Shown: in pieces, positions 6,721 through 62,699 of the stretch
Layout of the letters: each line of letters opens with the position of its first letter
Numbering within the stretch: position 1 is the stretch's first letter
Assembly: GCF_006345805.1 (NCBI RefSeq)
Contig: NC_042997.1
Span: 46,376,001-46,440,000, forward strand
Source of the DNA: Octopus sinensis
Lineage: Eukaryota
DNA: 64,000 bases
Direction of reading: 5' to 3'
The notes under the pieces: generated by a model
Told to the model about the DNA's origin: nothing
The model's database searches: none
What the model saw: only the letters and a program-made list of their open reading frames with translations
Translations under genes and position numbers: made by a program

Positions 6721-7732
6721 AAATCGAAGGCTCACATACAAATAGCATAGTCTCTTATGGACCGCAGATATTTGAGTAGAAGTGTAGAGTCATTCATGTA
6801 GTTTACCGTAGAAAACTATAATTATAAGATAGTATTGTATTTGGAGTATTTCCAGTAGTTTCATATTTCGAGATCAAAACACGAGCTTCTAGTTGGTGAA
6901 AACCACGCATCGTTTCGATTTTCAATTCATAGAAGTTCTCTTCACTGACGCAGTTAATGTCCTTTGAAAAGCTAGAATGTGATAACACTCCTTTTTCCAT
7001 GTACATTATATTATGCTTACAGGCCGCAGCTCACTTCAATATGTCAATATTTATACCATAACTATTTGATTTGTTCGTTTCGTAGGAGATTTCTTCAAAT
7101 ATTACAGTGTGAATATAGAAACATTGAGAATCTACTTTTGGTAATATGTTCATTTTTACAAATGTACGATCGTTATTTTCATTTATACACTACATTCATT
7201 TATACACATTATGTTCAGTTGTGTATTCGTACATTATGTTCAGAGTGACATTTGTACGTTGGATACATTTGGTCGCCATTTCTTCAATGCTTTGTTCTTC
7301 ACTCTTTCTCCTCATTTTCTGTTGTGATGTTTCTTTGATATATATTTTCCATTGTTTGTTGCGTCCATATTTATATATAGATCAGTTGTAGTTCTTTGGG
7401 TAGAATAACGTTACTGGCAAACGTAGACTTGTTCTCACTTTGGGTTTTAATAATAACTGTTGTTTCATCCGACCTACATTACTATTGCCATTTGCAGAGA
7501 TAAATGTTATAGGATTTGCTCATAATTTCTCAGGACTCATAGATCTATAGAAAAGGACCACGGGAAAACGGACACACATACATTCACACCAGTATGTGTG
7601 CGCGCGCAGGCGTTTATGCTAGCAGTGCTTGTGTGTGTGCGTGAGAGCAAGTGAATAGTGTATGCGTGCGGGTGTGGTTGTTCGCTGTAGAAATATAAAT
7701 CTGGAAAAGGTGTAAGAGAATTATATAACCTT

Positions 7733-7833
7733 TATCTATCTATCTATTTAGATATCTATCTGATCTATCTATTTATCTAATCTATCTATCTGTTTGTCTG
7801 TTTGTCTGTCTATCTATCTAATCTATCTGTCTG

Positions 7834-13536: not shown

Positions 13537-14750
13537 CGAGCACGAGAGATATTCATTATACATTTTCTCTGACCCACTTCCGGTTCTTGCAGGAAACAGA
13601 ACTTGTACAGGTATGATTATATATGTCTCTACTTGTTACATTCTAAATTGCAGCTTTCCGCTAAAATACGTTGTCTATTACGGCTGCTGAAGTGCACTAA
13701 GGTGTTATAATGGACGTAGCTTTATATTGATGAGTGAACAGGTTCTTATACTTAAAACGTACACCAAAAGAAACTTTTTGTGAGATGAAAGAAATTTACG
13801 ACTCAGTGAAGCACTGGCATCGCCTGTTTAAATGCGGTCGGACATAGGTGGAAACTGCACCTATTCCTGAACGATTCCGCCATTGATGATGACACCATCC
13901 AAAAATCTGAAGTCTCTTTTTTTGAGTTTCACTGCATGACTATTCGACAACTAGCGCAAGAAGCGACGATCAGTGTACGTTTCCTGGATAAAATCATTCA
14001 CGACTGTTTTCAGATGCTGAAGTTGTCTGCACGATGGATTCCCCGGATGCTCACACCTTTTCAGAAGTAGGAATGTGTCAAGCACTCTCAGACACTTGGC
14101 AATGTGCCAAGAAGACGAGGACTTTTTCCCCAGACTTATTACACGGGATGAAACATGGGTGCATCACAATGATCCTGAGACTAAAGCCCAGTCGAAGCAA
14201 CGGAGAAGTATGATAACTCACCCCCTATAAAGAAGGCCCTCAGCAGGCAAGGTGATGCTCACAGTTTTTTGGGATCAGTGTGGAGTAGTGATGATGGATT
14301 TTCTGGCAAATATAACCGCAATTAATTATGATTCTCTGCTGCAGAATTTACGAGAGGCCATCAAAGAAGAGAGGCGTGGCATGCAGATGAAAGGAATCCG
14401 TTCCCTCCTAGACAAGGCTCCAGCTCACAATGCGCATGTTGCCCAGATGGAAGCATACTCCTGCGGCCATGAAATCCTTCCACATCCTCCTTACTCTCCC
14501 GATCTCGCATCACCTTTTTTCAACCATGAAAACTTTTTTGAAAGGGAAGCACTTTCCGAAGTAAAGTTTTGGCCCCAGACTCAACCTACCCACTTCTACA
14601 GATGAGGTCTTCACAGCTGCAAAAAAAACGATGGGAGAAGTGTGTCACCATTCATGGTAGCTATGTAGAGGGACGAGTAATTATGCCAAGTTTCGCTTAT
14701 TCCAGTCCTTGTGTAGTGGGTCAGAGGAAATCTTTAATGAGTAACACTCG
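13537..14750 (+). mobile_element. Near full-length defective mariner (DD34D) element
   Basis: Motifs LSARWIPRMLT, ITRDETWVHH, VMLTVFWD, LLDKAPAH and LPHPPYSPDLA. TIR cores TTTTCTCTGACCCAC / GTGGGTCAGAGGAAA with TA flanks. Multiple stops and frameshifts. Confidence 0.92.
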
Positions 14751-17579: not shown

Positions 17580-18808
17580 CAGGGATTGGACAAAATAATG
17601 GAGGAAATACCTTAAAATCTCAGACAACTTTATTTTAATATGGGGTAGGTCCACCTTTGGCAGTAATTACAGCTTGAATTCTACAAGGTATGAACTCGTA
17701 CAAGGTTTCAATTGTTTCCAAAGGAATGTTTGTCCTTTCTAAAACAGTCTCCAGTTCTTGTAGTGATGATGCTGGAGGATATCGACTCCTTACTTGTTTT
17801 TTTAAAATGCACCATAAATGTTCAATAATATTGAGATCTGGGGAATGTGGTGGCCAGGTAAGAGCGTCAACTTCCCATTCAGTACCAACTTTAGCTGTGT
17901 GAATTGGTGCATTATCAGCCTGAAAGATTGTGTTTCGCTCCGGAAATAGTCCCGCAAGCATACGTTGAATTTGATCAGATAAAATGCTTAAATAGTATTG
18001 ACTATTAATTATGCCATGAAGGGAAACCATTGGGCCGGCGGATTTCCAAGATATAGCCACCCACCCAGATCATCACAGATCCTCCTCCCTGTTTAACAGA
18101 TGTTAGACGGCAGTCTGGGGCAAATGCTTCTTTTGGCTGTCTCCACACGTATACTCGGCCGATGCTCGGAAATAAGGTAAAAGATGAATCGTCCAAGAAA
18201 ATAACATTCTTCCACTGCTCTAGGGACCAAATCTGTGGGTTTTTACTCCACTCTAAACGCTTTGCAACAATTGTTTTTGAAAGTAGTGGTTTTCTGATTG
18301 CAGCTCCCGGCGAACAGTTTTTATGGAAACTGGGTTCCCGAAGTGGTCTTTAAACTCTGCAGTAATTTTTGGAGCTGTACTTTTTTTATCCTTTCTAACA
18401 ATTCGTATAAGATTCCAACGGTCCCTTTCTAAAAGTTTTTGTTTTCTTCCGGAGTTTTGTTTCGACGAAGATGTTTTTCCCTCTTTCTCAAAAGCTGTCA
18501 TTACTTTCGAGACAGTACTTCTTGATACACCAAACATTTCGGCTGTTTTCGTTGCGCTGGCGCCTGCCATATAAACACTAACAATTTGACCTCTTTGAAA
18601 GTCTGATAGATCTGTCATTTCAATGAATTTTAATTACCTTTTTCTGATGATATCTGAAAAGAAACAGTAATTTTAGCAAAACATATTAAGCAACACTAAT
18701 AATAAATCAAAAAAGCATAAAAATAAAGAAGCTTTTGTTGGTTTTATAGATATTTCAAAATTACGATGCTGTGATGCTAGGTATTTCCATTATTTTTTCC
18801 AACCCCTG
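17580..18808 (-). mobile_element. Full-length defective Tc1 element
   Basis: TIRs CAGGGATTGGACAAAATAATGG / CCATTATTTTTTCCAACCCCTG. Fragments MTDLSDFQRGQIV..FGVSRSTVSKV, DDSSFTLF, GGGSVMIW, FQADNAPIH and WPPHSPDLNIIEHLW; frameshifted. Confidence 0.95.
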
Positions 18809-24311: not shown

Positions 24312-25427
24312 ATGGTCGGCGAACGAACCACAAAAAAAAGGAGTATCAGAATAACAAACTCGGCATCTGAACAACTTTGGACCCCCATAACAACTGAAGA
24401 GGTTACCCAGGCACTGCAAAGACTAAGCAACTGGAAGGCACCTGGGTATGACAAGATCTCCAACTTCTGGTTGAAATATCTAACAGGAATGCACAAAAAG
24501 CTGGCTGAAAACTTTAACAAAGTACTAGCAGAGCCAGAGACAATGCCTGAATGGCTCACGAAGGGGAAAACCATCTTAATTCCCAAATCAAATGAAACAG
24601 AAAAACCAGAAAACTACAGACCAATAACCTGCCTCCCTACTATGTTCAAGGCATTTACTGCAGTGATATCACAAAGGCTGAACAAGCACCTGGACGAAAA
24701 CAAACTGTTCCCAGAAGAGCAGAAAGGATGCCGCAAAGACTCATATGGCTGTAAAGATCAACTAATGATTAATAAAGCCATAACTGAAGACAGCCACAGA
24801 AAGAAGAAAGGCCTCAGTATGGCCTGGATTGAATACAAAAAGGCGTTTGATAGCATCCCCCACACATGGATCCTCGAAACACTAGCCATTAACAAAGTAG
24901 CACCAACAATCATAAAATTCATAGAGCACTCTATGAATAAATGGCAAACAGTCCTACACCTCCAAACAAAAGAGGGACTCATGAAAACCAAAGACATCCC
25001 CATTAGAAGAGGAATATTCCAGGGAGACACGCTCTCTCCACTCCTTTTCTGCTTGGCACTGTCACCTCTATCTGATATGCTAAATAGAACTGGATGCGGA
25101 TATAAATGTTACGGCAAAACGATCAGCCACCTTTTATATATGGATGACCTAAAACTATACGCTGCAAATGACAAACAGCTGGAAACACTATTAAAGACAG
25201 TTCATGGATTTACCAAAGAAATAGATATGAAATTTGGATTAGAAAAATGCGCCAAAGTAACCCTGAAAAGAGGAAAACTAGTTAAGAGTAACAACATCAC
25301 ACTAGATAAAACCAATGAAATAAAAGAATTAGACCAAAGCCAAACTTACAAATACTTAGGAATCCATGAACTAGATAAGACACATCACACACAAATGAAA
25401 GAGAAAATAAAAAAAAGAATATTATAG
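24312..25427 (+). pseudogene. Dong/R4 ORF fragment: reverse transcriptase domain
   Basis: 371-aa open frame with a full RT motif set including YMDD; bounded by frameshifts in A-runs (~24345, ~25420). Confidence 0.92.
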
Positions 25428-25581
25428 ACGAGTTAGATCAATACTAAACACAGAGCTCAATGCTAAAAACAAGATAATAGGTATCAACACTTTAGCTGTC
25501 CCAGTTATAAGTTACAACTACAATATCCTTAACTGGGCACGAAATGAACTGACCAAAATAGATAGGAAAACAAGAAAAATA

Positions 25582-26637
25582 ATGACAGGATCTAGGATGC
25601 ATCACCCAAAATCTGACATAGAAAGACTATATATACAACGTATAGAAGGTGGTAGAGGCCTTATACAGCTGGAAAACTACTATAAAATAACCACCATAGG
25701 ACTGCAAAAATATCTACTTCAGAAGGAAGGAAAACTGATCCAGATAGCGGCAAAACACGAGCAAAACAAAAAACTGTTCTCAGTATTTAAGGAAGCTGAC
25801 AAATACAAACAAGAAATCATACCACCTAATAAACACGAAGAAGAAGAAGAAGAAGAAGATGAAGAAACAACAAAAGCTATAAAACAAATGAAATCCAAAC
25901 TAAAAATAGAACAGCAACGAACCATGATAAAACGATGGCAAGAAAAGCCCCTTCATGGTAAATACTGGACTAAACTAAACGCAAAAGAAATAGTCAAAGA
26001 AAACTCCCAGCAATGGTTGAGAAGCTCAGGACTCAAAGCAGAAACAGAGGGATTTTTAATTGCAGCACAAGACCAAAGCCTCCCCACCAGAAATTACCAA
26101 AAACATGTAATGAAAAGAAACATTACAAGTAACTGCAGAATATGTGGAGATGGACAAGAAACAATAAATCATATTATCTCTAGCTGCCCAGTCTTGGCTA
26201 AGAAGGAATATATTCACAGACATGACAGAGTTGGAACCTACATACATTGGAAGCTATGCCAACATTATGGAATAACAACAGAAAAAAGATGGTATAGGTA
26301 CACACCAGAAAAGGTCACAGAAAACGAGAAAGCAACCATACTCTGGGATATGCCGATACACACAGATAGAGAAATTAAGGCCAACAGACCAGATATAGTT
26401 GTCAGAGATCATGAAGAAAAAAAATGCTTTCTAATTGATGTATCAATACCGGCTGATGACAACGTGTCTCTAAAAGAAATGGAGAAACTCTCAAAATACA
26501 AAGACCTGGAAATAGAGGTAACTAGAATGTGGAATCTGAAAACAGAAACAATTCCTATCGTTGTAGGTGCATTAGGCATGATAAAAATATTCAGACAAAT
26601 ACATAACAAAAACACCAGGACTTACAAACACATATAA
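25582..26637 (+). pseudogene. Dong/R4 ORF fragment: C-terminal zinc finger + restriction-like endonuclease
   Basis: MHHPKSDIERLY..GGRGL, WLRSSGLKAETEGFLIAAQDQSL, CCHC, RHD, PD..D and KYKDL. Confidence 0.92.
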
Positions 26638-26844
26638 CATACAGAAAATTGCACTACTAGGCACTGCACACATCCTAGGCAGAACACTTTCCATACAATA
26701 ACCATCAGAGCATCACAACAAATCACAGCACATACCCAAGGCACACAGAGCTGTGCTCGGTAGTGAAGTGAAAGCACGCTATAAAAATAAAACTACTGAA
26801 TGATAATAACAATAATAATAATAATAATAATAATAATGATAATA

Positions 26845-26876
<32 letters not shown>

Positions 26877-26877
26877 G

Positions 26878-26914
<37 letters not shown>

Positions 26915-26915
<1 letters not shown>

Positions 26916-27423
26916 TTAGTATAAAAGATGGGCTGCAGCAAATATTCTGCTCTTGGTATAAAAGATGAGCTACAGCAAATATTCTGCTCAATACCACAGA
27001 TTTGCTTGTCAGTTGTTTGACCGTAACCAGTTGAGCATGTCCCTTAGTGGCTGACGATATGTGCATCTCTGATCACGAGCAGAAGTAGTGGGGGAGCATC
27101 ATAGCCATGTGTTGAGAGGGATTCTTTGGGGTTTGAATAATTCACCTCTGGAAACATGGGTAATTCTTTCAACATTCCTAAACAACCCCTATTCAGGGAC
27201 CTTTTGAGCGGGATGGGCTACTCAACCTGAAGAAATTTCTAACTGGGCCCCACCTGCAAGGTCATGTGCTGTTTATCTTGATATGAGATCACCATGTCGC
27301 GCACATATGGTTCTGATGCATGTGCCTAGTGTACCCTTATCAGACGTGTAGTCATGATGGGTATATTGGGCTCCGTATATTTTACTCCAGTGTCACTTTG
27401 ATGGCATGAACTGCTCTTTCACT
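26915..27423 (+). mobile_element. Noncoding interspersed repeat inserted in (TAA)n with an (AAT)n tail
   Basis: About 510 bp with no long ORF, ending CTCTTTCACTC-(AAT)n. It has a 37-bp duplication at its 5' end, and an inverted partial copy lies at 29754-29849. Confidence 0.7.
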
Positions 27424-27424
27424 C

Positions 27425-27466
<42 letters not shown>

Positions 27467-27692
27467 GAGAAGAAGAAGAAGAAGAAAGAAGAAGAAGAAG
27501 AAGAAGAAGAAGAAGAAGAAGAAGAAGAAGAAGAAGAAGGAAGAAGAAGAAGAAGAAGAAGAAGGAAGAAGAAGAAGGAAGAAGAAGAAGAAGAAGAAGA
27601 AGAAGAAGAAGAAGAGAAGAAGAAGAAGAAGAGAAGAAGAAGAAGAAGAAGAAGAAGAAGAGAAGAAGAAGAAGAAGAAGAAGAAGAAGAAG
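27424..27692. repeat. (AAT)n followed by a long (GAA)n microsatellite
   Basis: Directly visible. Confidence 0.95.
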
Positions 27693-28235
27693 ACAGCTGC
27701 TGGAAGTGTTCTTTGTTACTCTGACCGGTCGGCAGCCGAAGACACAGAAACACTAATACAACCCAGTAGGAAAACTGAAAAATAACTCTCAAAAACTGGA
27801 ATGTCTACAATTTCTTGTAAGTATTTTAAATTTCCCTCAAAATAAGTTTAGAAACTTACGTATCTACAGTTTTCGAACGCACAAACGATCGGATTTAAAA
27901 ACTATATCTACAACTTCTGTGAATAACTATCCTTTCTTTTCGAAAATGTTAACATCCCTTTTATTGCAAGAACACTACAGTATTCTCTGTTCGGACATAC
28001 AAACGATTACATTCAGAAAATTTTAAAACTTTAAAATCTTAAATTTTCTGAAAAAATTTTACCTTTCTTTTCTCCCTGACTAATCGAATATGTAAACATA
28101 TCTGTTTTTGCAACACAATTAAAAGCACGATAAAAAAATAAGAAGGTAAGCACCTGCCAATATATACAAACTGCACAATTACTAAAGCTAAACCACAGTA
28201 AAATGTATAAAAAGAAAAGAAAGATTTAAACATAG

Positions 28236-28281
<46 letters not shown>

Positions 28282-28284
<3 letters not shown>

Positions 28285-28770
28285 TGTGTCAATAGCCTGC
28301 TGGAGAAGATGTTCTCCTGGGGCTACAAGCTACAGTAACATATGGTGGTTAACCATATTTAGATGGCAAATATACTTCACATTGTCGTGTAGTTACTGTC
28401 TATACCTCATTGAGAGATTTATTATTGCTTGTATACACTTTGTCAAGATCAGTGACGAAAAGTCACTGGAAAAAGGATATAAATATTTGCATTGGGACCC
28501 TTCCATCGAAAACCGGTGATTGTCGTGCGCTGATGACGGGTCAATGCCCAGAAACTGCAGTCCGTGCGTATCACTTAGGTTGACGAGGGAAGGATGACCT
28601 CCCTTTGCAAATACCGATAGGGCACAGAAAGTGAGTCAATAGCCAGCTGGAGAAGATGTTCTCCTGGGGCTACAAGCTACAGTAACATCCACCCTTAGTG
28701 GTTAGCCATATTTAGATGGCAAATATACTTCACATTGTCGTGCAGTTACTCTCTATACCTCGTTCAGAGA

Positions 28771-28774
<4 letters not shown>
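28282..28774 (+). mobile_element. Hammerhead-bearing 347-bp unit present as ~1.4 tandem copies (candidate retrozyme / PLE pLTR)
   Basis: Direct repeats 28282-28421 and 28629-28774 flank a unique segment carrying an HHR. (TA)n lies on both sides. Confidence 0.75.
28515..28575 (+). ncRNA. Type I hammerhead ribozyme motif
   Basis: GGTGAT-tgt-CGTGCG-CTGATGA-C-GGG(tcaatg)CCC-A-GAAA-C(TGCA)G-TC-CGTGCG-t-ATCACT. Intact core, GUC triplet (cut after 28562), palindromic ACTGCAGT stem III, and an extended stem I with an internal loop. Confidence 0.8.
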
Positions 28775-28809
<35 letters not shown>

Positions 28810-30372
28810 TTGTATCAGTAATTAAAAACAGAACAAGGGGAATTGCTTCTTTCGAAGACCAAGGTTAGCGCTCTCATTGATCGCTAGTAATAGTAAACAC
28901 ATTTGACCCTCTGCTGAACCCAAGGGTCTAAGGCTTCTTTTGTCCCCTGATAACACAAGAATGCGAACGCCCATTGTTGATCCCCTTCTCACCATCTGCT
29001 GAAACTCTTTACAGACCTGTGGAATTTGTTCCATTCACCAAACTGTTTCTCTTCCTCCTATTATTCCCCCAAAGGTCACATATTCATGATTATCTCAATT
29101 ACAAAACAAAAGTAAAAATAAACAACATTTAATAATACCACATAGTAGTAGGAGCAAAGGTGGCGGATTTAAATGGGGTTAGCCGCGACGATACAGTTCA
29201 AAGCACTATTGGTGGTAACAAACGATGACGAATGCTGTAATAGCAAGATTGAAGTGACTGTAACAGTATTAATTGCGGAATCGTCAATAGTAGCAGAGAA
29301 AACAACCGTCTTTACATCTATCACAGTACAGGGCTCAATACTAATAATTTCAATGTAGCACAAATATGTCTTAGGAAACAAAAAGGAAAACTTCAACAGT
29401 ACACCAAATCACTTTCCTATGGTCAATATGGAAGCGCGTCTCTCAGGGGAGAGTCAGTCTGGGGTCGAAAATTCAACCACTGACACAAATTCTTCTCTGA
29501 ATAAGAACCTGGATGGTCACTTGAACGGGAACTGCACCAACTCGAGCCCTCCAAATCCACTACCACATCCACCACAGAAAGAAAAATGTAAGAGGATCAA
29601 ATGGAACCAAGAAGAGTTTACAGAAGTAATATATGAATATTGATATGCATTAGGTAGACTATCTGAAGAAAAACACACTACAGACATTTATCAAATATGG
29701 AGAACACGATATCAAGACGCAAGAATATATTTGGACGAAAATAAGTTAGCAAATGGTTAAGGTCAACCAACTGACAAGCAAATCTGTGGTATTGAGCAGA
29801 ATATTTGCTGTAGACCATCTTTCATACCAAGACAAAACAATGTATATGAGCATACGCAGTGACCATAATATCTTGGCACAAGCATTTTATAAACTCAGAA
29901 AATATAAAGATTTGCTAATCGAAATCGAAAAGATGTGGCATCTCAAGACAGTTACAATATCAGTTATTGTAAAAGCACTTGGAATGATCAGTAAATGAAA
30001 ATTATTTAAGAATGATGCCTGATTTACCATCCATACAGGAAGTGCAAAAGAGTGTCTTAAAAGGTACGTTTTGAGAAGAAGATTGTCGCTGTGAATTGTC
30101 TTTCCTTTTCCTTCCTTTTATTTTATTTATTCTTTTATTTGTTTCAGTCATTTGACTGCGGCTATACTGGAGCACCACTTTTCCACATCTTCAGAAATAT
30201 AAGACTCACAGATAGTGAAATAATTGCTATCAAGCATGCAGTGGAAAATGACCTAAATATAAGAGAGAAAGGATATGAAGAACCAGACCAAGCGAGCTAC
30301 TCTCCAATAGTCTCAACTGAAAGACTGCCATTTGACTAGAACCTGTAAACGTCTGGAGAAATAAATTGTAAT

Positions 30373-30530
30373 GAGGAGTGGCTGTGTGGTAAGTATGTTG
30401 CTTACGAACCACATGGTTCCAGGGTCAGGCCCACTGCGTGGCACCTTGGGCAAGTGTTTTCTGCTATAGCCTCGTGCCGACCAAAGCTTTGTGAGTGGAT
30501 TTGGTAGATGGAAAATGAATGAAGCCCGTC

Positions 30531-30571
<41 letters not shown>

Positions 30572-30798
30572 TGTGTGTGTATATATTTGTGTGTCTGTGT
30601 TTGTTCCCCCCCAGCAACGCTTGACAACCGATGCTGGTGTGTTTACGTCCCCGTAACTTATCGATTCGGCAAAAGAGACCGATAGAATAAGTACTAGGTT
30701 TACAAAGTATAAGTCCTGGGTTCGATTTGGTAGACTAACGGCAGTGCTCCAGCATGGCCACAGTCACATGACTGAAACAAGCAAAAGAGTAAAAGAGA
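30373..30798 (+). mobile_element. SINE family B, full length, inserted in the Dong relic
   Basis: GGAGTGGCTGTGTGGTAAG head through to the CAGTGCTCCAGCATGGCCACAGTCACATGACTGAAACAAG tail. Confidence 0.9.
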
Positions 30799-32518
30799 AC
30801 TTGAAAAGATAGCGAGAAAAGTGGTGGAGAATCAATATTGAAGAATACACAATTAATGGAGAACATAGAGAGTCTATGATAGAACTGAAGCAGAAAATCA
30901 TGAATAAGCTTGCAGTTTTAACACACGCCAATATACATGATAAAGAACCACTTCGTAAGCTCTCAAATACAATCCAAAATAGAAAACAAATTAAAATTGG
31001 AAACTTTGTAACAAAGGAAATTATACAAGAATAAAAACCAAATATTAATGAATTAAATAAAACTATTTATGCTGCTGCTAAGACAATTGAAACGAGTTGT
31101 ATGCCTCTGAAAAGGCAAAGAAATACAAACCTGGGAAGAATTCCAAACTGGGAAAGTGAAAATGAAAAAGAGATTGAATTAATGAGAGGTTAATTATCAA
31201 TATTGAATTAACTAATCTGTGGAAACGATGTAAAGACCAGAAAAGGAAGGAAGATGGAGAGAATACATAGATTCTCACCAAGAGAAGAACTGCTTTCAGC
31301 AAACAAAACAAAGCAACATAAGTCCAAGTAAAATTTCAATGAATATGGTTTTGAGAAGAGAAACACATTTTACAAGCAAAATACGCTGTTCACATCCAAT
31401 GCGAAAACATTCTACAGAGAAATAGGGAATGAAAAAGTAACCACCTCCTTACCATGGGAGAAGTTGAAAACTTCTGAAAAAGTATCTGGAGTGATGGAAA
31501 GACTTACAATGAAAATGTAGACTGGGTTAGACGCAAAGAAGGATCCTACCAAACTTACCAGAACATGCACGGGAAGATATCACAGTAGCAGAACTAAGGA
31601 TGACACACACGAAGGCTCATAAGTGGAAATCCCCTGGTAATGATAGGGTTCCAAATTTCTGATACGCCTTGCTTCCGTGCGACACGAAAAGTTAGTCCAG
31701 TTGTTCAATGAAATTAGAAGAGGTCGTACGAAAACACCTGATTAGTTAGTTATCTACTCCTGAATTATAATGAAACCAAATTTCCCCAAACTATCGGCCC
31801 ATAACATGTCTGTCAACCACGTATAAAATTTCCACTTACATCATCGTGGAGAAAACATACGATATTTTCCCCACTGACCAAAAACGGTGCTGACGAGGCT
31901 CATATGGATGCAAAGACCAACTCTTAATCAATCCCATGATCCTTTAGAAGTGTTATAACAAATGCAGATATCTTAGTTCTGCATGGATTGATTATTAAAA
32001 GGCCTTCGACAGCATACCGCATTCACGGGTCTTGAAATCGCTGGATATCTGCAAAATTTCTCCTGTTTTCAAAATTCCTGAAGCACAACATGTCAAAATG
32101 GAATACGAATCTCCAATTATAACACTGATGGAGTACTAACCATGAAAAATATTAGTATCAACTGCGGCATTTTCTAAGGAGGTTCACTTTCACCTTTAAT
32201 TTTCTGCACAGCCCTTATATCCCTTAGAACTGAACTTAACAGAACAGGGTATGGATATAAAATTGGCGACAAGAAAATAAGTCATCTGTTTTATAGGAAT
32301 GGTTTAAATCGCTATGGCAAAGACGATAATGAGTCTGAAAGACTGCTGCGTACTGTGAGAGTATTCAGTGATGACATCGGTATAGAATTTGGTCTAGATA
32401 AATGTGCTAATGTTACTTTTCAGAAAGGGAAATTGAAGACCTCACATTCATTGGTGTTGGATGTTGACACAAATAACTCGAACAGGATCAAACTTACAAA
32501 TATCTCGGAATAAATGTG

Positions 32519-32680
32519 GGCTCTGGCATTCAACATGCAAGTCTGAAAGTGAAGACCAGGCTCTGGCATTCAACATTCAAGTCTGAAAGTGAAGACCAGG
32601 CTCTGGCATTCAACATGCAAGTCTGGAAGTGAAGACCAGGCTCTGGCATTCAACATGCAAGTCTGAAAGTGAAGACCAGG
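32519..32680 (+). repeat. 40-bp minisatellite x4 inside the Dong relic
   Basis: GGCTCTGGCATTCAACATGCAAGTCTGAAAGTGAAGACCA four times, with only 2 substitutions. Confidence 0.95.
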
Positions 32681-33404
32681 AAAGGCTGGTACAGAAGAGT
32701 TCGAGCAGTCCTAAAATCCGAGTTAAATGCTCGTAACAAGGTGTTAGCTATAAATTCCTTAGCAGTTACGGTGATTATTTACAGTTTCGATGAGTTGAAC
32801 TGGAATATGAGCGAAATAAGGAAGATTGGCAGGAAAATCCGTAAGCTGCTGACCTGCAATAAGATGCACCACCCAAAGGCAGACGCAGGTCATCTTTACC
32901 TTCCCCCAGCACAAGGAGGGCGAGACTTGATCCAATTTGAATTCTACAAATCCACCACTGCTAACAAATGGTACAAGCACCACCCGGAGGCTGTAACTGA
33001 GGGAGAAAATATAACTATTGTTTGGGACTTCCCATTATGTACAAACAGGACCATCAAAGCAAACAAACCGGATATTGTTGTTAAAGACCGAAACAATAAA
33101 ATATATTTATTGATTGACATGAGCATACGCCGGGACCATAATATCTCGACAAATAAATTTGATAAGCTCAGAAAATATACAGATTTGCTAATCGAAATGG
33201 AAAAGATGTGGCATCTTAAGACGGTTACAATACCAGTTATTGTAAGAGCACTGGGAATGATCAGTAAATGAAAATTATTTAAGAATGATCCCTGATTTAC
33301 CATCCATGCAGGAAGTGCAAAAGAGTGTCTTAAAAGGTACATGTTGAGAAGATTGTCGCTGTGAATTTTCTTTTCTTATCCTTCCTTTTATTTTATTTAT
33401 TCTT

Positions 33405-47212: not shown

Positions 47213-47460
47213 CGTACATACATACATACATATATATATGCATACACACGCATACGCATACATGAATACACATACATACGTGCTTACATACATATGTGTA
47301 TGCACACGCACATGCGCAAAAGCAGAATGAACGCAGCTCACAGAACAGAAAGAGCCAACGACTATTGAAAAGGTTGCAAGACGCAACGATACTTTCAGAA
47401 GAAATGAAGAAGTGAATGAGTGGAAACTGAATCGGTGAGTGTGTTAAAAGATAAGGGGCA
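46490..47460. repeat. Diverged inverted repeat (~125-bp unique arms 46490-46612 / 47335-47460) around microsatellites
   Basis: TTAACACACTCACCGATACAGTTTC..GCGTCTTGCAGCCTTCTCGATAGTTGTTG is the reverse complement of CAACGACTATTGAAAAGGTTGCAAGACGC..GAAACTGAATCGGTGAGTGTGTTAA. Confidence 0.8.
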
Positions 47461-48132
47461 AAACGAGAATGACTGTCCCTAGCTACAACAAAATAAGTTT
47501 CAACACACGAAGTCACATAAAGAATCTTGCAAACCAAACCCCAAAATGAAATCGTGTGTCGTATAGCCAGATGGAGACGATGTCTCCTGGGAGTGAACAA
47601 CAGTAGCATTCGCCCCAAAACGAGAGTGCTACATTAGGTTGTCAAAAAATCGTTACTTTATATATATTTGTGTGTGTGTGTGTGTGTGTGTGTGTCTGTG
47701 TGTGTGTGTGTGTGTGTATGTGTATCTGTATACATACGTATATATACTGCCTATCGCGAAGTTCATTCTCTTGCAAAACCACGAGAGAAACTCTGAGTTG
47801 AAGATAACGTCATATATATATATATATATATGCATAATTATATATGCATTATGTATGTATATATATATACATACATATATATATATATATATGCATACAT
47901 ATGAATTATGTATTATGAATGGATTGTGTGTATATTCGTGTGTGCGTGCGTGTCCATGTATTCCGGCTTCCAAAACAACAATTGAAAACGCAAAGAAAAT
48001 TTAGTTTCATTCGACCACATTCAATATTATTTCTAAACTGCAGCCATCATGCAAATACACACACACACACATACATTCACACACACACTTGCATATGCGT
48101 ATACATGCATATATACATGTATATATGTATAT

Positions 48133-59427: not shown

Positions 59428-59732
59428 CATACATACATACATACATACATACATAAATATATGTATCAATAATAATAAAAGGCTAAAATTTAATTAATTA
59501 ATAATTAATAATTTTGCCAAGTAGTTCGGTACGTTAAAATAAACTTTTTAGGTAAAATCATACAAATATTCTATAAATACAAACATAATTATAATAAGAG
59601 GTCAGCTAATTGCTTCGCCACGCACCGAATTTAGAAATAGGTGTTAAAATGCCCTTTCTACTACCATAGAATATTTGTATATATATATATACATTTTAGA
59701 GAGAATTAAATTTAAGTTTATATATATATATA

Positions 59733-59884
59733 CTTTATTTTAAGCAGCAGAAAATTCAACAAAATCTGTTACTCTGAGTTTCTCGTTGCCGTTCATCAGA
59801 CAGTTCATCAAAACTGTCTGATGAACGGCAACGAGAAACTCAGAGTAACAGATTTTGTTGAATTTTCTGCTGCTTAAAATAAAG
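59733..59884. repeat. Perfect palindrome: 73-bp arms, 6-nt loop, HHR-like motif on each strand
   Basis: 59733-59805 is the exact reverse complement of 59812-59884; the loop is CATCAA. Confidence 0.95.
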
Positions 59885-59953
59885 CATATTACTCTACCAC
59901 TGGTATTTGACTACTCTTTTTTCCACCTTGTTTCACATTTATGTGTTTACTCC

Positions 59954-59990
<37 letters not shown>

Positions 59991-60478: not shown

Positions 60479-62699
60479 GGTTGCTTCTGCGCATGTGCGA
60501 GTCAGTGTTGTGTTTGGCACTGAAGCGGTGAAGACGTGCTATTGAAAACTTTGGAAGCCCCATGTAAGGTAAGATTCTGTTTTCTGGGTCCAGTGGGAGT
60601 TTTTGTTGAGAATTGTTTTTTACAGGCAGGAAGTCCTACTGGATTCAGAATTCTGATTCTGCCGACATGTGGCAAATATATTTTTCTCGCTGAGAAAATT
60701 TTTGGGGGCGTATCTGTCCTCGATAAATTGAGTAAATAATTTTCTCACCTAATTGTGAGAATTGTATTGTGCTGTGAAGAACTTTTATGAATTGTGAAAA
60801 CTACTACTTCGCAAGAAAATTATAAAAATAAGCCACTATTGGATTACCTTTCGGACCCATTTTTGTGGAGGTTGTGTTGCAGTTGCGGCGTTCCAGGTTA
60901 AACCCAGGCCGGGAGTACCGCAAGGCCAGAATATTTTTGCTGTGTTTTTTTTCTGTTTATTAACTTTCTTTTGAACTTCATTTAACCCCCCCCCCCCCTT
61001 TTGTTTTTTTTCTTTATTGCGACTTTCCGTTGATTTCCTCCCTTCTGTTGTGCTTTCTCCTTTTTGTTTTTTCAAAAATCTATCAAATTTTATTTGGACT
61101 TTTGAACTTTTTTCTTCCTGCTTTTTGAGTTTAATTTGAATATATTTAAAAAAAAAAACATGGCAATGAAAAATAACAAAATTTTGGAGTGGGAAATCAT
61201 ACCACCTAAAAAGTGGTTAAAAGACCGTGAAGATAGGACGGTGGTGTTGAGAACCTACTCCAAGGCACTTGACACCATCGCCTTATTCGAAAAGACGGCA
61301 ATTGAGGAGGAGTTGGAAGAGTATTTGCCAACAATTAAATTCATTTCCAGGGGTGTCAAATATGCAACGGTGTGGTTGCTATTTGACACCCCTGAAGAGG
61401 CTTGCAAATTTGCTAGCAAACCCTTGGAGGGTAAGGAGATCTTATTCCTGCCCACGTACAAAAAAAAGAAATTGATGAAAGCTTGGATCTGCGGACTGCC
61501 ACCCGACATAGAACCCGACGGGATAGAGGAGACTATCCGCCGGGGTCTGGGTGACAGCGAAACTAAGCTCCTCAATGTAAAAGTTCTTCCTGCGGCTGCT
61601 TGGGTTGGGTCAAAAGCAATTTTGACCCTGTGGGCCCAATCAGCCAATCTGGTTCTTCCAGATTTTTTGAAAATGGCCGGGTGCAGGTACCCGGTGATGC
61701 TTGAGGGTCGCCCCCCTAAGTGTCATCGGTGCTTGGAGTCCGGCCACATAAAGAAGAACTGTCCTCGGGAACAAAATAGGATCCCGGAACAGTTAAGTAA
61801 AACCCCTCTAGAAGAGGGAACGATAACGGCCGAGAAAGCAGAGGACTCCTCAAACAGAGGCCGAAAGAGGAAGGTGAGCAACAATGGGTGCTCACCAAAG
61901 GATAATAGGGATGAGGAGAGGAAGGCGAATCTTCCAGCCACGGAGGAGACGCACCCTCCCTCAGTTGAAAAGGGAAAAAAAAGAAAAAGAGGAAGGAAAA
62001 ACGGGACATTACCGGCTGTCAGTGTAGCACCGGAATGTCCCGGAACTACGTCGGTTGGGGTTGTGCCACCGACAAGAGAAGGAATACCGTTGGCGGGAAC
62101 TGTACCGCCAACGAAAGAACTGAACGTATTGGTCCTCTTCTATAGAGGAGGAGAAATTGAAAAAGTGATGGAAGAGCACTACAAGGGAGCACCTTTAGCC
62201 TTCACACAGGACCCCGAATGGCCTCCGCAGGTAGCTGTGGAGGCCGTGGCGTTCGACGTGACGCTTGGGCTAAAGGAGCTCAATGAAGATTATAACTTGG
62301 TCCCGGGCGACGCGAACTCGGAACTTGATTATGTTCTGAGGGAGGCGTGGTTGATGGTGGAGGGCGCGGGCACAAGCTATTTCGAGGACGATATGTAATA
62401 TTAGTAATGGACTTAAGTCCAAAAATTGAAAAATTGTAAGATGATTAATACCTCGTTCTGTATTAATAATGGACTGCTAAGTCCAAAAATTGGAAAAATT
62501 GTAAGAGGTTTAATACCTCGTTTTGTGTTTATCCTTAAAAAGAGCAATGTTTTAGAGAAGCGAAAGTCGGCGGGCGCTTTTTGTCTTCTCCCATCCTTAT
62601 CATCCTTCTTTCATTATCATTCACCTCATTAATGTCCTCGTCCAGCCCGCAAAGCTAACTTAATCTGTGTACTGCCTTTATGGCAAATGTTTTGAAATA
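60479..62699 (+). mobile_element. ORF1-only Tx1/L1-like retroelement (candidate HAL1-type non-autonomous element)
   Basis: Single intact ORF1-like CDS with ~680-bp 5'UTR and ~300-bp 3'UTR ending TGAAATAAA. TSD AAGTAGCTTG at 60464-60473 and 62700-62709. No EN/RT sequence. Confidence 0.75.
61160..62398 (+). CDS. Intact 412-aa Tx1/L1 ORF1-like nucleic-acid-binding protein (RRM-like + CCHC zinc knuckle)
   Basis: ATG at 61160. KAWICGLPPDI..DFLKMAGCRYPVMLEGRPPK-CHRCLESGHIKKNC (CX2CX4HX4C, 61721-61762); basic RGRKRK and KKRKRGRK clusters; GC-richer than the flanks. Confidence 0.88.
   Translation: MAMKNNKILEWEIIPPKKWLKDREDRTVVLRTYSKALDTIALFEKTAIEEELEEYLPTIKFISRGVKYATVWLLFDTPEEACKFASKPLEGKEILFLPTYKKKKLMKAWICGLPPDIEPDGIEETIRRGLGDSETKLLNVKVLPAAAWVGSKAILTLWAQSANLVLPDFLKMAGCRYPVMLEGRPPKCHRCLESGHIKKNCPREQNRIPEQLSKTPLEEGTITAEKAEDSSNRGRKRKVSNNGCSPKDNRDEERKANLPATEETHPPSVEKGKKRKRGRKNGTLPAVSVAPECPGTTSVGVVPPTREGIPLAGTVPPTKELNVLVLFYRGGEIEKVMEEHYKGAPLAFTQDPEWPPQVAVEAVAFDVTLGLKELNEDYNLVPGDANSELDYVLREAWLMVEGAGTSYFEDDM

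What the first reader, a model, noticed from the sequence alone, without database searches (positions are those of the whole stretch)
28282..28774. Candidate retrozyme: 347-nt noncoding unit with a near-canonical type I hammerhead, integrated as ~1.4 copies
Seen: ~140-bp direct repeats 347 bp apart (28282, 28629) enclose an HHR with intact CUGAUGA/GAAA cores and a GUC site (cut after 28562). It has a palindromic ACUGCAGU stem III and an extended stem I with an internal loop. The rest of the unit has several hairpins (GGAGAA/TTCTCC, ATATGGT/ACCATAT, CAGTGAC/GTCACTG), no ORF and (TA)n on both flanks. A diverged fragment of the same repeat lies at 47554-47610. Established: metazoan non-LTR retrozymes are short tandem units with type I HHRs that give circular RNAs, and Penelope pLTRs carry minimal dimer-cleaving HHRs. 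Inference: a more-than-unit-length insert whose ends do not coincide with the cleavage site fits reverse transcription around a 347-nt circle. I do not recall such a family described in cephalopods. Deviation: C/A mismatch at 10.1-11.1.
Basis: partly seen in the sequence, partly recalled or inferred. Interest (0 to 1): 0.88.

Follow-up and report, generated by a model that had tools for sequence, protein, structure and literature searches.

The report
Octopus hammerhead-ribozyme retroelement (retrozyme) copy
This is a real, non-coding, ~347-base mobile element from an octopus genome that carries a self-cleaving hammerhead ribozyme motif and sits in a (TA)n microsatellite as 1.4 copies; it is a new, cephalopod member of the already known "retrozyme" class rather than a new kind of thing.

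Summary
A 493-nt insert (28282-28774), 1.42 copies of a 347-nt unit, lies between two (TA)n tracts. It carries a type I hammerhead (HHR) motif at 28515-28575 with an intact core and a GUC site (cut after 28562). The window is octopod. A 352-nt relative in Octopus sinensis (76% identical) keeps all 13 core bases and all 29 HHR pairs, 7 by compensatory changes. Both units fold into strongly structured rods (z -5.2 and -7.0). The unit has no meaningful ORF, and no RT or GIY-YIG remnant lies in the flanks searched (both strands to the right, plus strand only to the left). All three insertions abut a TA-rich microsatellite. They have different, circularly permuted ends, and their 3' junctions fall at A/U-rich microhomologies. 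The O. sinensis copy adds an inverted partial copy, the signature of Penelope-like element (PLE) insertions. Best reading: a non-autonomous non-LTR retrozyme mobilised by PLE machinery. Templating by a circular RNA fits but is not distinguished from a multimeric linear RNA. Rfam's hammerhead models do not score it, probably because of a mismatch at the base of helix II that both full copies share. Self-cleavage and circles are untested. It is a new member of a known kind, of moderate interest.

The parts
28238..28281 (.). Left (TA)n microsatellite, the target-site flank
   Evidence: Read directly; repeat family D1.
28282..28425 (+). Arm X: the partial upstream copy, unit positions 1-144. It carries a 6-nt deletion relative to X' and the O. 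sinensis copy.
   Evidence: Direct repeats D2 and D3; blastn 89% over 150 nt; alignment A2.
28426..28628 (+). Segment Y: the unique part of the unit (positions 145-347), which holds the hammerhead
   Evidence: Aligns with O. sinensis L001:7546-7745 at 85% column identity.
28515..28575 (+). Type I hammerhead motif. Helix I is 6 bp, then a UGU/U internal loop, then a 5-6 bp distal helix. Core CUGAUGA. Helix II is GGGU/GCCC with a CAAU loop and a C.A mismatch at its base. Then GAA, then helix III A-C[UGCA]G-U, then C17. The predicted cut lies between 28562 and 28563.
   Evidence: Sequence; descriptor scan with 0.033 chance hits per shuffled window; 29 of 29 pairs kept and 7 compensatory against O. 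sinensis; 0 of 13 core bases changed against 15 of 50 non-core; homodimer fold forms an 8-bp intermolecular ACUGCAGU helix III.
28500..28592 (+). Extended helix I 'rod' (CUUCC...GGAAG) that closes the rest of the unit onto the hammerhead
   Evidence: Consensus fold of the window and O. sinensis copies: helix 1 has 17 pairs, 5 of them compensatory; circular MFE folds.
28629..28774 (+). Arm X': the second copy of unit positions 1-146. It ends at GAGAUUUA, directly against (TA)n.
   Evidence: X continues ...TTTATTATTG, whereas X' continues ...TTTAATATAT.
28775..28810 (.). Right (TA)n microsatellite flank
47361..47663 (+). Old, degenerate second insertion of the same family, about 0.87 unit (from Y position ~35 through X position ~120). 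Its hammerhead core has decayed (CTGATGA has become AAAGATAA). It ends next to TATATATATTT(GT)n.
   Evidence: Local alignment score 87 against a null of 31 +/- 5.7, maximum 55; the best-kept part scores 47 against a maximum of 24; nhmmer E = 0.026 for the core part.

Best explanation
The insert is a copy of a non-autonomous, non-coding retroelement of the metazoan 'non-LTR retrozyme' kind. It belongs to an octopus family with a 347-352-nt unit.

Shown by the sequences:
- The unit carries a type I hammerhead motif on the + strand.
- Its catalytic core and all its helices are conserved, with compensatory changes, between this genome and Octopus sinensis.
- The rest of the unit folds into a conserved, highly paired rod that grows out of helix I.
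- Copies are dispersed, lack coding capacity and abut TA-rich microsatellites.
- They are circularly permuted pieces of 0.9 to 1.4 units with different ends.
- Their 3' junctions fall at A/U-rich stretches of the unit. One copy has an adjacent inverted partial copy.

Inferred mechanism:
- Transcripts that contain two hammerheads pair through the palindromic helix III (ACUGCAGU) to form the active double hammerhead, and cut after GUC.
- Unit-length RNA may then be circularised by a host tRNA ligase, as shown for mussel and axolotl retrozymes.
- A Penelope-like element's GIY-YIG nuclease and RT nicks (TA)n.
- The exposed TA-rich DNA end anneals to an A/U-rich stretch of the RNA (unit positions ~83-152) and primes cDNA synthesis.
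- Because the template is circular or multimeric, synthesis can pass the starting point. This gives more-than-unit-length inserts with an intact (uncut or religated) cleavage site.
- Priming from the second strand gives the inverted partial copy.

I put about even odds on circle versus linear multimer as the template.
For: Hammerhead motif:
- Present, and unlikely by chance: 1 observed against 0.033 per shuffled window.
- The O. sinensis relative L001:7427-7832 is 76% identical over 417 nt.
- It keeps 29 of 29 HHR pairs, 7 of them with changes on both sides. Controls with slid partners pair in 32-47% of cells.
- 0 of 13 core bases differ, against 15 of 50 non-core HHR bases (P about 0.01).
- Loop 2 (CAAU) and the helix I internal loop (UGU/U) are invariant.

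Whole unit:
- The consensus fold has 71 pairs, 11 of them compensatory.
- Circular MFE is -110.1 kcal/mol (z = -5.2) for the window unit and -112.1 (z = -7.0) for the O. sinensis unit.
- The predicted homodimer is 8.5 kcal/mol better than two monomers and uses an 8-bp intermolecular helix III.

Non-coding and unattached:
- The longest ORF is 77 aa, without homologues.
- Pfam finds no RT or GIY-YIG in the three + strand frames of 26640-28281 plus 28811-31700, or in the three - strand frames of 28811-31700.

Architecture:
- (TA)n lies on both flanks here and on the O. sinensis copy. The old copy at 47361-47663 ends at TATATATATTT(GT)n.
- 3' junctions fall at unit positions ~146, ~120, 83 and ~152. 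Each is an AU-rich microhomology.
- The O. sinensis copy has a 103-nt inverted partial copy, 97% complementary and 13 nt away, next to the upstream partial copy.
- That is the arrangement Craig et al. 2021 describe for PLEs, along with a (TA)n insertion bias (PMC8557442).

From the literature:
- Metazoan retrozymes are 170-400-nt type I HHR repeats, including 350-390 bp in mussel.
- An axolotl HHR with a 2-bp helix III and a mismatch at the base of helix II cleaves mainly as a dimer.
- RtcB circularises the RNAs (PMC7229834).
- Penelope families are recently active in Octopus vulgaris (PMC13282606).
Against: - No Rfam hammerhead covariance model reports the motif, even at E <= 10 on 81 nt.
- The 10.1-11.1 pair next to the core is a mismatch (C.A here, U.U in O. 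sinensis). In canonical hammerheads it is a conserved G-C, so activity may be weak or dimer-dependent.
- This locus has a single hammerhead. On its own it cannot release a unit-length RNA, and no array with two or more hammerheads of this family was seen.
- Only two full copies and one decayed copy were available, so covariation rests on two sequences, and the structure was derived from them.
- No PLE ORF or pLTR was available for comparison, so the link to PLEs is architectural only.
- No RNA data exist: expression, cleavage and circles are untested.
- X and X' differ by 5% and one indel, so this copy is old and probably inert.
Confidence: 0.78

Rival explanations
1. This is the same element, but the template was never a circle. 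A linear read-through or multimeric transcript from a tandem source locus, or RT template-jumping between two RNA molecules, gave the partial-tandem product. This is how PLE pseudo-LTRs are usually discussed.
For: PLEs with ORFs, which are far too long to be retrozyme-type circles, show the same partial-tandem plus inverted structures (PMC8557442). Every insert seen here (1.42, 0.87, and 1.13 units plus an inverted piece) can be cut from a linear multimer. The cleavage site inside the insert is intact, as expected for uncut RNA.
Against: In the species examined experimentally, retrozyme RNAs accumulate as abundant circles, the predominant form in mussel (PMC7229834). The unit is a compact, strongly paired rod, like those circles. 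No multimeric source array of this family was seen in about 130 kb of octopus DNA.
Confidence: 0.4
2. It is only a truncated terminal piece (pLTR region) of an autonomous Penelope-like element, not a separate non-autonomous family.
For: It has a hammerhead with a palindromic helix III, a partial-tandem arrangement, an inverted partial copy and a (TA)n target. All of these are PLE traits. In Xenopus, retrozyme consensus sequences are homologous to PLE pLTRs.
Against: Both the X-to-Y junction and the Y-to-X junction are conserved in two independent insertions in two genomes. The 347-352-nt sequence therefore closes on itself with no room for an ORF. Pfam found no RT or GIY-YIG in any frame searched around the insert: all six frames to the right, three on the left. 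A PLE copy truncated at its 5' end would retain the 3' part of the ORF. The hammerhead has the canonical helix sizes (6 bp, 4 bp, 2 bp plus tetraloop) of retrozyme HHRs, not the minimal PLE type.
Confidence: 0.1
3. It is a SINE-like element mobilised by a microsatellite-targeting LINE, for example the restriction-like-endonuclease LINE whose ORFs lie 1.6 kb upstream. The hammerhead would be a passenger.
For: LINE ORFs sit at 24312-26637, and related fragments flank the insert. From my own knowledge, some Dong/R4-clade LINEs are known to target microsatellites. Octopus genomes are rich in unclassified SINEs.
Against: The unit shares no sequence with the LINE or its 3' region: blastn and nhmmer of the unit against the whole window find only the family's own copies. 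The 3' ends of the inserts are not fixed, unlike SINEs that copy a LINE 3' tail. The partial-tandem-plus-inverted architecture and the type I HHR are PLE hallmarks.
Confidence: 0.07
4. It is a chance hammerhead-like motif inside a local tandem duplication produced by slippage in a microsatellite.
For: Rfam's hammerhead models do not match. The fold of the isolated 81-nt motif is not better than shuffles (z = -0.37).
Against: The same unit, with the motif, occurs in O. sinensis with compensatory changes and an untouched core. A third, decayed copy lies 19 kb away. The chance expectation is 0.033 per window.
Confidence: 0.02

Closest known systems
Metazoan non-LTR retrozymes (Cervera & de la Pena 2020, PMC7229834), especially the Mytilus galloprovincialis 350-390-bp family and the axolotl Rtz_353 / HHR_Amex2
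   Same: A short non-coding unit (347-352 nt) with GC below 50%. A type I hammerhead with a 6-bp helix I, a 4-bp helix II, and a 2-bp helix III capped by a tetraloop. A mismatch at the base of helix II, as in HHR_Amex2 (U.U). A predicted dependence on dimers. A highly self-paired predicted circle. The host is a mollusc.
   Different: Seen here only as inserts of 0.9-1.4 units with one hammerhead each, not as long tandem arrays. The inserts lie in (TA)n microsatellites with microhomology junctions, and one has an inverted partial copy. Neither feature is described for retrozymes in the parts of the 2020 paper that I read. There is no sequence similarity to known families that I could test. Expression and circularity are unknown.
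Hammerheads in the pseudo-LTRs of Penelope-like elements (Cervera & de la Pena 2014, PMC4209133; Craig et al. 2021, PMC8557442)
   Same: A type I hammerhead with a palindromic helix III that implies dimeric action. Partial-tandem insertion, an adjacent inverted 5'-truncated copy, and insertion bias for (TA)n microsatellites.
   Different: There is no RT/GIY-YIG ORF. The unit closes on itself in about 350 nt. The hammerhead has canonical helix sizes and a long helix I. PLE min-HHRs instead have a long helix II, a short helix I and a single bulged base after A9. A typical PLE-type minimal hammerhead pair does occur elsewhere in the window (59770-59847), and it looks different.
Newt satellite 2 and Schistosoma Sm-alpha hammerhead repeats
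   Same: Repeats of about 330 bp with type I hammerheads that have a weak helix III and act as dimers.
   Different: Those occur in long tandem arrays, and their core-proximal G10.1-C11.1 pair is intact. They are different phyla with no sequence relationship.
Plant LTR retrozymes (Cervera et al. 2016, PMC4918200)
   Same: Non-autonomous, hammerhead-bearing, give circular RNAs, and depend on an autonomous retroelement.
   Different: Plant elements carry type III hammerheads in true LTRs, with a PBS and PPT and 4-bp TSDs, and are mobilised by Gypsy elements. Here the repeated arms are not fixed LTRs: the repeated part is 144 nt in this insert and 48 nt in the O. sinensis one.

Membership tests
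Hammerhead ribozyme, type I | Conserved core C3-U4-G5-A6-N7-G8-A9, G12-A13-A14, the A15.1-U16.1 pair, and H17 (not G) at the cleavage site | tested here: met
   CUGAUGA at 28530-36, GAA at 28551-53, A28554-U28561, C28562. The O. sinensis copy is identical at all 13 positions.
Hammerhead ribozyme, type I | Three helices around the core, with helix I open and helices II and III capped by loops | tested here: met
   Helix I has 6 bp, an internal loop and then 5-6 bp. Helix II has 4 bp and a CAAU loop. Helix III has 2 bp and a UGCA loop.
Hammerhead ribozyme, type I | A Watson-Crick 10.1-11.1 pair (normally G-C) adjoining the core | tested here: not met
   C28537 faces A28550, and the O. sinensis copy has U.U at the same place. 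The published precedent for a mismatch here is axolotl HHR_Amex2, which is weak as a monomer and efficient as a dimer.
Hammerhead ribozyme, type I | Match to the curated covariance model (Rfam Hammerhead_1 and related hammerhead families) | tested here: not met
   No hammerhead family is reported at the gathering score in the window. None is reported at E <= 10 on 651 nt, on 81 nt, or on the O. sinensis copy.
Hammerhead ribozyme, type I | Covariation supporting the helices | tested here: met
   29 of 29 pairs are standard in both sequences and 7 have changes on both sides. Slid controls have 0-2. There are only two sequences, and the structure was derived from them.
Hammerhead ribozyme, type I | Site-specific self-cleavage giving 2',3'-cyclic phosphate and 5'-OH ends | not testable with these tools
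   This needs in vitro transcription of monomer and dimer constructs.
Metazoan non-LTR retrozyme | A short (about 170-400 nt) non-coding unit with GC below 50% that carries a type I hammerhead | tested here: met
   Units of 347 and 352 nt with 43% GC. The longest ORF is 77 aa, without homologues.
Metazoan non-LTR retrozyme | Occurs as head-to-tail tandem copies (dimers up to long arrays) | tested here: inconclusive
   Only 1.42, 1.13 and 0.87 units were seen, each with one hammerhead. An unrelated 425-nt hammerhead family in O. sinensis L002 does show about 1.7 tandem units.
Metazoan non-LTR retrozyme | No LTRs and no coding capacity (non-autonomous) | tested here: met
   The repeated arms differ in extent between insertions (144 nt against 48 nt), so they are not LTRs. 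The Pfam frames searched were negative. PBS and PPT were not searched for specifically.
Metazoan non-LTR retrozyme | The predicted circular RNA is stable and highly self-paired | tested here: met
   Circular MFE z = -5.2 (window) and -7.0 (O. sinensis). The consensus fold has 71 pairs, 11 compensatory.
Metazoan non-LTR retrozyme | [quoted passage not shown] | not testable with these tools
Metazoan non-LTR retrozyme | Coexists with autonomous Penelope-like elements in the same genome | tested here: inconclusive
   No PLE ORF was found among the window's larger ORFs or in the flank frames searched. Published annotations report active Penelope families in Octopus, and a PLE-type minimal hammerhead pair lies at 59770-59847.
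Autonomous Penelope-like element (or its pLTR) | A single ORF with an RT and a GIY-YIG endonuclease between the terminal repeats | tested here: not met
   The 203 nt between X and X' hold no such ORF. There is no RVT or GIY-YIG hit in the + strand frames of 26640-28281 plus 28811-31700, or in the - strand frames of 28811-31700.
Autonomous Penelope-like element (or its pLTR) | Insertion architecture: partial tandem, adjacent inverted 5'-truncated copy, microsatellite target | tested here: met
   Partial tandem here. Partial tandem plus a 103-nt inverted copy in O. sinensis. (TA)n at all insertions. Compared with the description in PMC8557442.

The most novel reading that the evidence does not exclude
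Octopus genomes may harbour several retrozyme families, some recently active. Candidates are this 347-nt one, a 425-nt one whose arms are 100% identical in O. sinensis, and a minimal-hammerhead one at 59.8 kb. They may use (TA)n microsatellites as landing pads, through microhomology-primed and twin-primed reverse transcription of circular hammerhead RNAs. If so, their permuted inserts would be a direct genomic footprint of circle-templated TPRT. The families could make up a sizeable part of the 'unclassified SINE' fraction and be a source of abundant non-backsplice circRNAs in cephalopod tissues.
Probability: 0.25. Interest if true: 0.65.

Novelty: new member of a known kind. Interest (0 to 1): 0.4.

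Why it matters
Retrozymes are the only known route to abundant circular RNAs in animals that does not use back-splicing. How they are copied back into DNA is still a hypothesis.

This octopus family adds a cephalopod example. I found no paper describing hammerheads or retrozymes in cephalopods.

More usefully, the insertions carry a clear Penelope-type signature: a (TA)n target, a partial tandem, an inverted partial copy, and variable 3' junctions based on microhomology. That gives sequence-level support to the recent proposal that animal retrozymes are non-autonomous passengers of Penelope-like elements.

It also suggests a simple genome-wide test. The distribution of insert ends around the circular unit map should distinguish circular from linear templates.

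For annotation, it means that some octopus 'unclassified SINE' or 'unknown' repeats are ribozyme-bearing elements.

Tried and rejected
1. Rfam, at the gathering score on the whole window and at E <= 10 on 651 nt, on 81 nt and on the O. sinensis copies, gave no hammerhead hit. The only strong hit (MIR904, E about 1e-10, in L001) is an artefact of the 103-nt inverted repeat.

2. I tried to find other copies through the unit's spurious ORFs:
- Exact look-ups found nothing.
- The word-indexed protein search found nothing.
- The full HMMER search returned a bacterial repeat protein and a low-complexity protein, both matches by composition only.

3. Exact look-ups of two TE ORFs from the window to identify the source genome found nothing on record.

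4. The RT ORF search gave only relatives at 57% identity or less, from many organisms. Two of their ENA contigs (L003, L004) share no repeats with the window, so they are not octopus.

5. Pattern scans of the metagenome and prokaryote genome collections, with the hammerhead and with the X head, gave 0 matches.

6. I considered that both window insertions start at the same unit position, which would have implied a defined RNA 5' end. I rejected this because the old copy extends about 190 nt further upstream.

7. I considered that the 425-nt hammerhead family in L002 is related to this one. I rejected this because the local alignment score is 44 against a null of 40 +/- 6.

8. The isolated 81-nt hammerhead is not unusually stable on its own (z = -0.37). 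The signal is in the motif, the covariation and the whole-unit fold, not in the energy of the short motif.
Full report
**What is there**

The window is AT-rich (36% GC), rich in microsatellites, and full of transposon remnants.

At 28282-28774 lies a 493-nt block between two (TA)n tracts (28238-28281 and 28775-28810). It has three parts: arm X (28282-28425), a unique segment Y (28426-28628), and arm X' (28629-28774).
- X and X' are 347 nt apart. blastn gives 89% identity over 150 nt, with a 6-nt indel. The ungapped blocks differ at 7 of 137 positions.
- Homology begins exactly at 28282/28629 and ends at 28421/28774.

**The hammerhead**

Y contains a type I hammerhead, read directly from the sequence:
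- distal helix I GGUGAU (28515-20)
- internal loop UGU
- proximal helix I CGUGCG (28524-29)
- core CUGAUGA (28530-36)
- helix II: C-GGGU-[CAAU]-GCCC-A
- G12-A13-A14 (28551-53)
- helix III: A-C-[UGCA]-G-U
- C17 at 28562, followed by CGUGCG-U-AUCAC(U)

This is the architecture Cervera & de la Pena 2014 give for canonical metazoan type I hammerheads. They describe a 6-bp helix I, a 4-bp helix II, and a 1-2-bp helix III capped by a small palindromic loop, which makes the ribozyme work as a dimer (PMC4209133).

Checks on the motif:
- A descriptor scan finds one good hit in the window, against 0.033 per shuffled window.
- The one departure is the mismatch next to the core, C at 10.1 facing A at 11.1.
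- No Rfam hammerhead model reports the motif, even at E <= 10 on 81 nt. By that curated test it is not a member. The identification rests on the motif, its conservation and its context.
- A homodimer of the 72-nt motif is predicted to be 8.5 kcal/mol more stable than two monomers. It pairs the two ACUGCAGU segments into an 8-bp helix III, the classical double hammerhead.

**Origin and relatives**

The spurious ORFs of the unit have no true homologues.

A gag-like ORF at 61136-62398 has only two homologues in 5.8 billion proteins. Both are from Octopus sinensis (63% and 78% identity). The window is therefore octopod, though its own genome is not in the collections.

I fetched the two O. sinensis loci, 67 kb in all, which share many repeats with the window.
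- One of them, L001, contains a copy of the unit at 7327-7832. It is 76% identical over 417 nt and has a 352-nt period.
- A profile search finds no further copies in the window or in the four loci fetched, two of which turned out not to be octopus.
- The 'fragment' at 47554-47610 proved to be the best-kept part of an old copy of about 0.87 unit at 47361-47663. Its hammerhead core has decayed.

That makes three insertions in about 130 kb of octopus DNA. This suggests a high copy number, but it is not a measurement.

**Conservation**

Between the window and O. sinensis hammerheads:
- All 13 core bases are identical, while 15 of 50 other positions differ (P about 0.01).
- All 29 pairs of helices I-III and the helix I extension are standard in both sequences. 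Seven changed on both sides, for example G-C to A-U at 1.5/2.5 and at 10.2/11.2.
- Structures with slid partners pair in only 32-47% of cells and have 0-2 such changes.
- Loop 2 (CAAU) and the helix I internal loop (UGU/U) are invariant, as expected if they make the tertiary contact of type I hammerheads (inference).
- The central GC of loop 3 becomes CG, so ACUCGGGU is still self-complementary, with two G.U pairs.
- The mismatch at the base of helix II is U.U in O. sinensis. It is shared by both full copies, not damage in this one. Axolotl HHR_Amex2 has the same feature and cleaves poorly as a monomer but well as a dimer (PMC7229834).

Over the whole unit:
- The consensus fold has 71 pairs, 11 of them compensatory.
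- The circular MFE is -110.1 kcal/mol (z = -5.2) for the window unit and -112.1 (z = -7.0) for the O. sinensis unit.
- Both fold as a rod that grows out of helix I, as described for retrozyme circles.

The caveat is that there are only two sequences, and the structures were derived from them.

**Insertion architecture**

All three insertions abut TA-rich microsatellites.

Their ends fall at different positions of the unit:
- This insert starts at X position 1 and ends at X position 146.
- The old copy starts at about Y position 35 and ends at about X position 120.
- The direct part of the O. sinensis copy starts at X position 37 and ends at X position 83.

Each 3' junction lies where the unit itself is A/U-rich, so the junction is a microhomology with (TA)n. 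Examples are GAGAUUUA|AUAU and CCAUAU|AUAU.

The O. sinensis insert also carries a 103-nt inverted partial copy, 97% complementary and 13 nt from the direct copy. The 3' end of that inverted copy (unit position ~152) abuts (TA)n on the other side.

A partial tandem, an adjacent inverted 5'-truncated copy and a microsatellite target are the structure Craig et al. 2021 describe for Penelope-like elements (PMC8557442).

There is no coding capacity in or next to the insert:
- The longest ORF is 77 aa.
- Pfam finds no RT or GIY-YIG in the + strand frames of 26640-28281 plus 28811-31700, or in the - strand frames of 28811-31700. The - strand of the left flank was not scanned.
- The LINE ORFs 1.6 kb upstream are an RVT_1-type LINE with a weak C-terminal nuclease-like hit. 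They share no sequence with the unit.

**Other hammerhead elements seen**

A relaxed scan found two more hammerhead-bearing short elements in (TA)n tracts.
- Window 59728-59889: a 78-nt perfect inverted pair. Each arm carries a PLE-type minimal hammerhead.
- O. sinensis L002:1030-2237: an unrelated 425-nt unit, about 1.7 tandem units plus about 1.1 inverted units, with 100% identical arms. Its 3' junctions are again at TA microhomologies 60 nt apart in the unit.

Such insertions therefore recur in octopus, and at least one family is young.

**Mechanism**

Shown: the anatomy, the conservation, the non-coding nature, and the target and junction pattern.

Inferred:
- Transcripts with two hammerheads cut themselves through the dimeric form.
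- Unit-length RNA is circularised by a host ligase, by analogy with mussel and axolotl.
- A PLE nuclease and RT nicks (TA)n.
- The TA-rich DNA end primes on the A/U-rich third of the RNA.
- Synthesis on a circular or multimeric template overruns the start.
- Second-strand priming gives the inverted piece.

The data do not separate a circle from a linear multimer or template jumping. I give them about even odds.

This particular copy has one hammerhead and arms that differ by 5% (JC 0.053). Using the O. vulgaris calibration in PMC13282606, that is roughly 7 million years if the arms were identical at insertion. The copy is probably an old, inert insertion.

**Comparison and novelty**

It works like, and fits most testable criteria of, a metazoan non-LTR retrozyme (PMC7229834). 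Its hammerhead is closest in design to axolotl HHR_Amex2, and its unit size is like the mussel family.

It fails two hammerhead criteria: the 10.1-11.1 pair and the Rfam model. Tandem arrays were not seen. Cleavage and circles were not testable.

It is not an autonomous PLE, but its insertion signature supports the 2026 proposal that animal retrozymes are PLE passengers (10.64898/2026.07.22.740005).

Full-text searches found no description of hammerheads or retrozymes in cephalopods. Octopus TE papers list active Penelope families and hundreds of unclassified SINE families, but no ribozyme elements.

Verdict: a real feature and a new member of a known kind. It is of moderate interest, mainly for the clean PLE-type, microsatellite-targeted junctions.

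Noticed in passing
window 59728-59951: A second hammerhead-bearing short element inside (TA)n. Two 78-nt arms form an inverted repeat, 99% complementary with a 6-nt spacer. Each arm carries a PLE-type minimal hammerhead, CUGU-CUGAUGA-A-CG[GCAA]CG-A-GAAA-CUCAGAGU-A|ACAG (plus copy 59818-59847, minus copy 59799-59770). The plus copy runs on to ~59951. (TA)n lies at 59716-59732 and 59952-59990. It looks like a twin-primed PLE-type insertion.
   Followed up: partly
L002 (O. sinensis CM016865.1) 1030-2237: An unrelated 425-nt non-coding unit with a hammerhead: CUGAAGA core, long helix II, palindromic helix III ACCUGCAGGU, GUA site. It is present as about 1.7 tandem units on the minus strand plus about 1.13 inverted units. 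The arms are 100% identical (201 and 160 nt), and (TA)n lies on both flanks. This is a very young insertion, so the family was probably active recently. The local alignment score against the 347-nt unit is at null level.
   Followed up: partly
L001 6920-7171 and 7839-8175: Next to the O. sinensis copy lie two further (TA)n-flanked perfect or near-perfect inverted repeats: 90-nt arms at 100% and 168-nt arms at 97%. They are possibly more head-to-head insertions into the same microsatellite. No hammerhead was detected in them.
   Followed up: no
window 24312-26637 (+), 32669-33271 (+), ~29.9-30.1 kb: LINE ORFs with RVT_1 and zf-RVT, plus a weak, sub-threshold C-terminal hit to the L_protein_N nuclease family on the 32669-33271 fragment. 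This suggests a restriction-like-endonuclease LINE, possibly of the Dong/R4 type reported as abundant in octopus. The best database relatives are only 57% identical or less. There are several fragments around the retrozyme, but no sequence is shared with it.
   Followed up: partly
window 61136-62398 (+): An intact 420-aa ORF with a zinc-knuckle-like motif. Its only homologues in the protein collection are two Octopus sinensis proteins. The DNA is 80% identical to L002:16398-17662. This is probably the gag-like ORF of an octopus-specific retroelement. It served to identify the taxon.
   Followed up: partly
window 14252-14605 (+), 17635-18618 (-): Tc1/mariner transposase fragments (DDE_3, Transposase_1 and HTH_Tnp_Tc3_2 hits).
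   Followed up: no
window 28530-28562: In the monomer MFE folds, core bases C3-U4-G5 pair with the CAG of the helix III loop region, an inactive alternative fold. The dimer fold frees the core. This could act as a switch that limits self-cleavage of monomeric or circular RNA. It is a prediction only.
   Followed up: no
L001 7382-7490: The Rfam MIR904 hit (53 bits, E about 1e-10, below the gathering score) is an artefact of the long hairpin formed by the direct and inverted partial copies. It is not a miRNA gene.
   Followed up: yes
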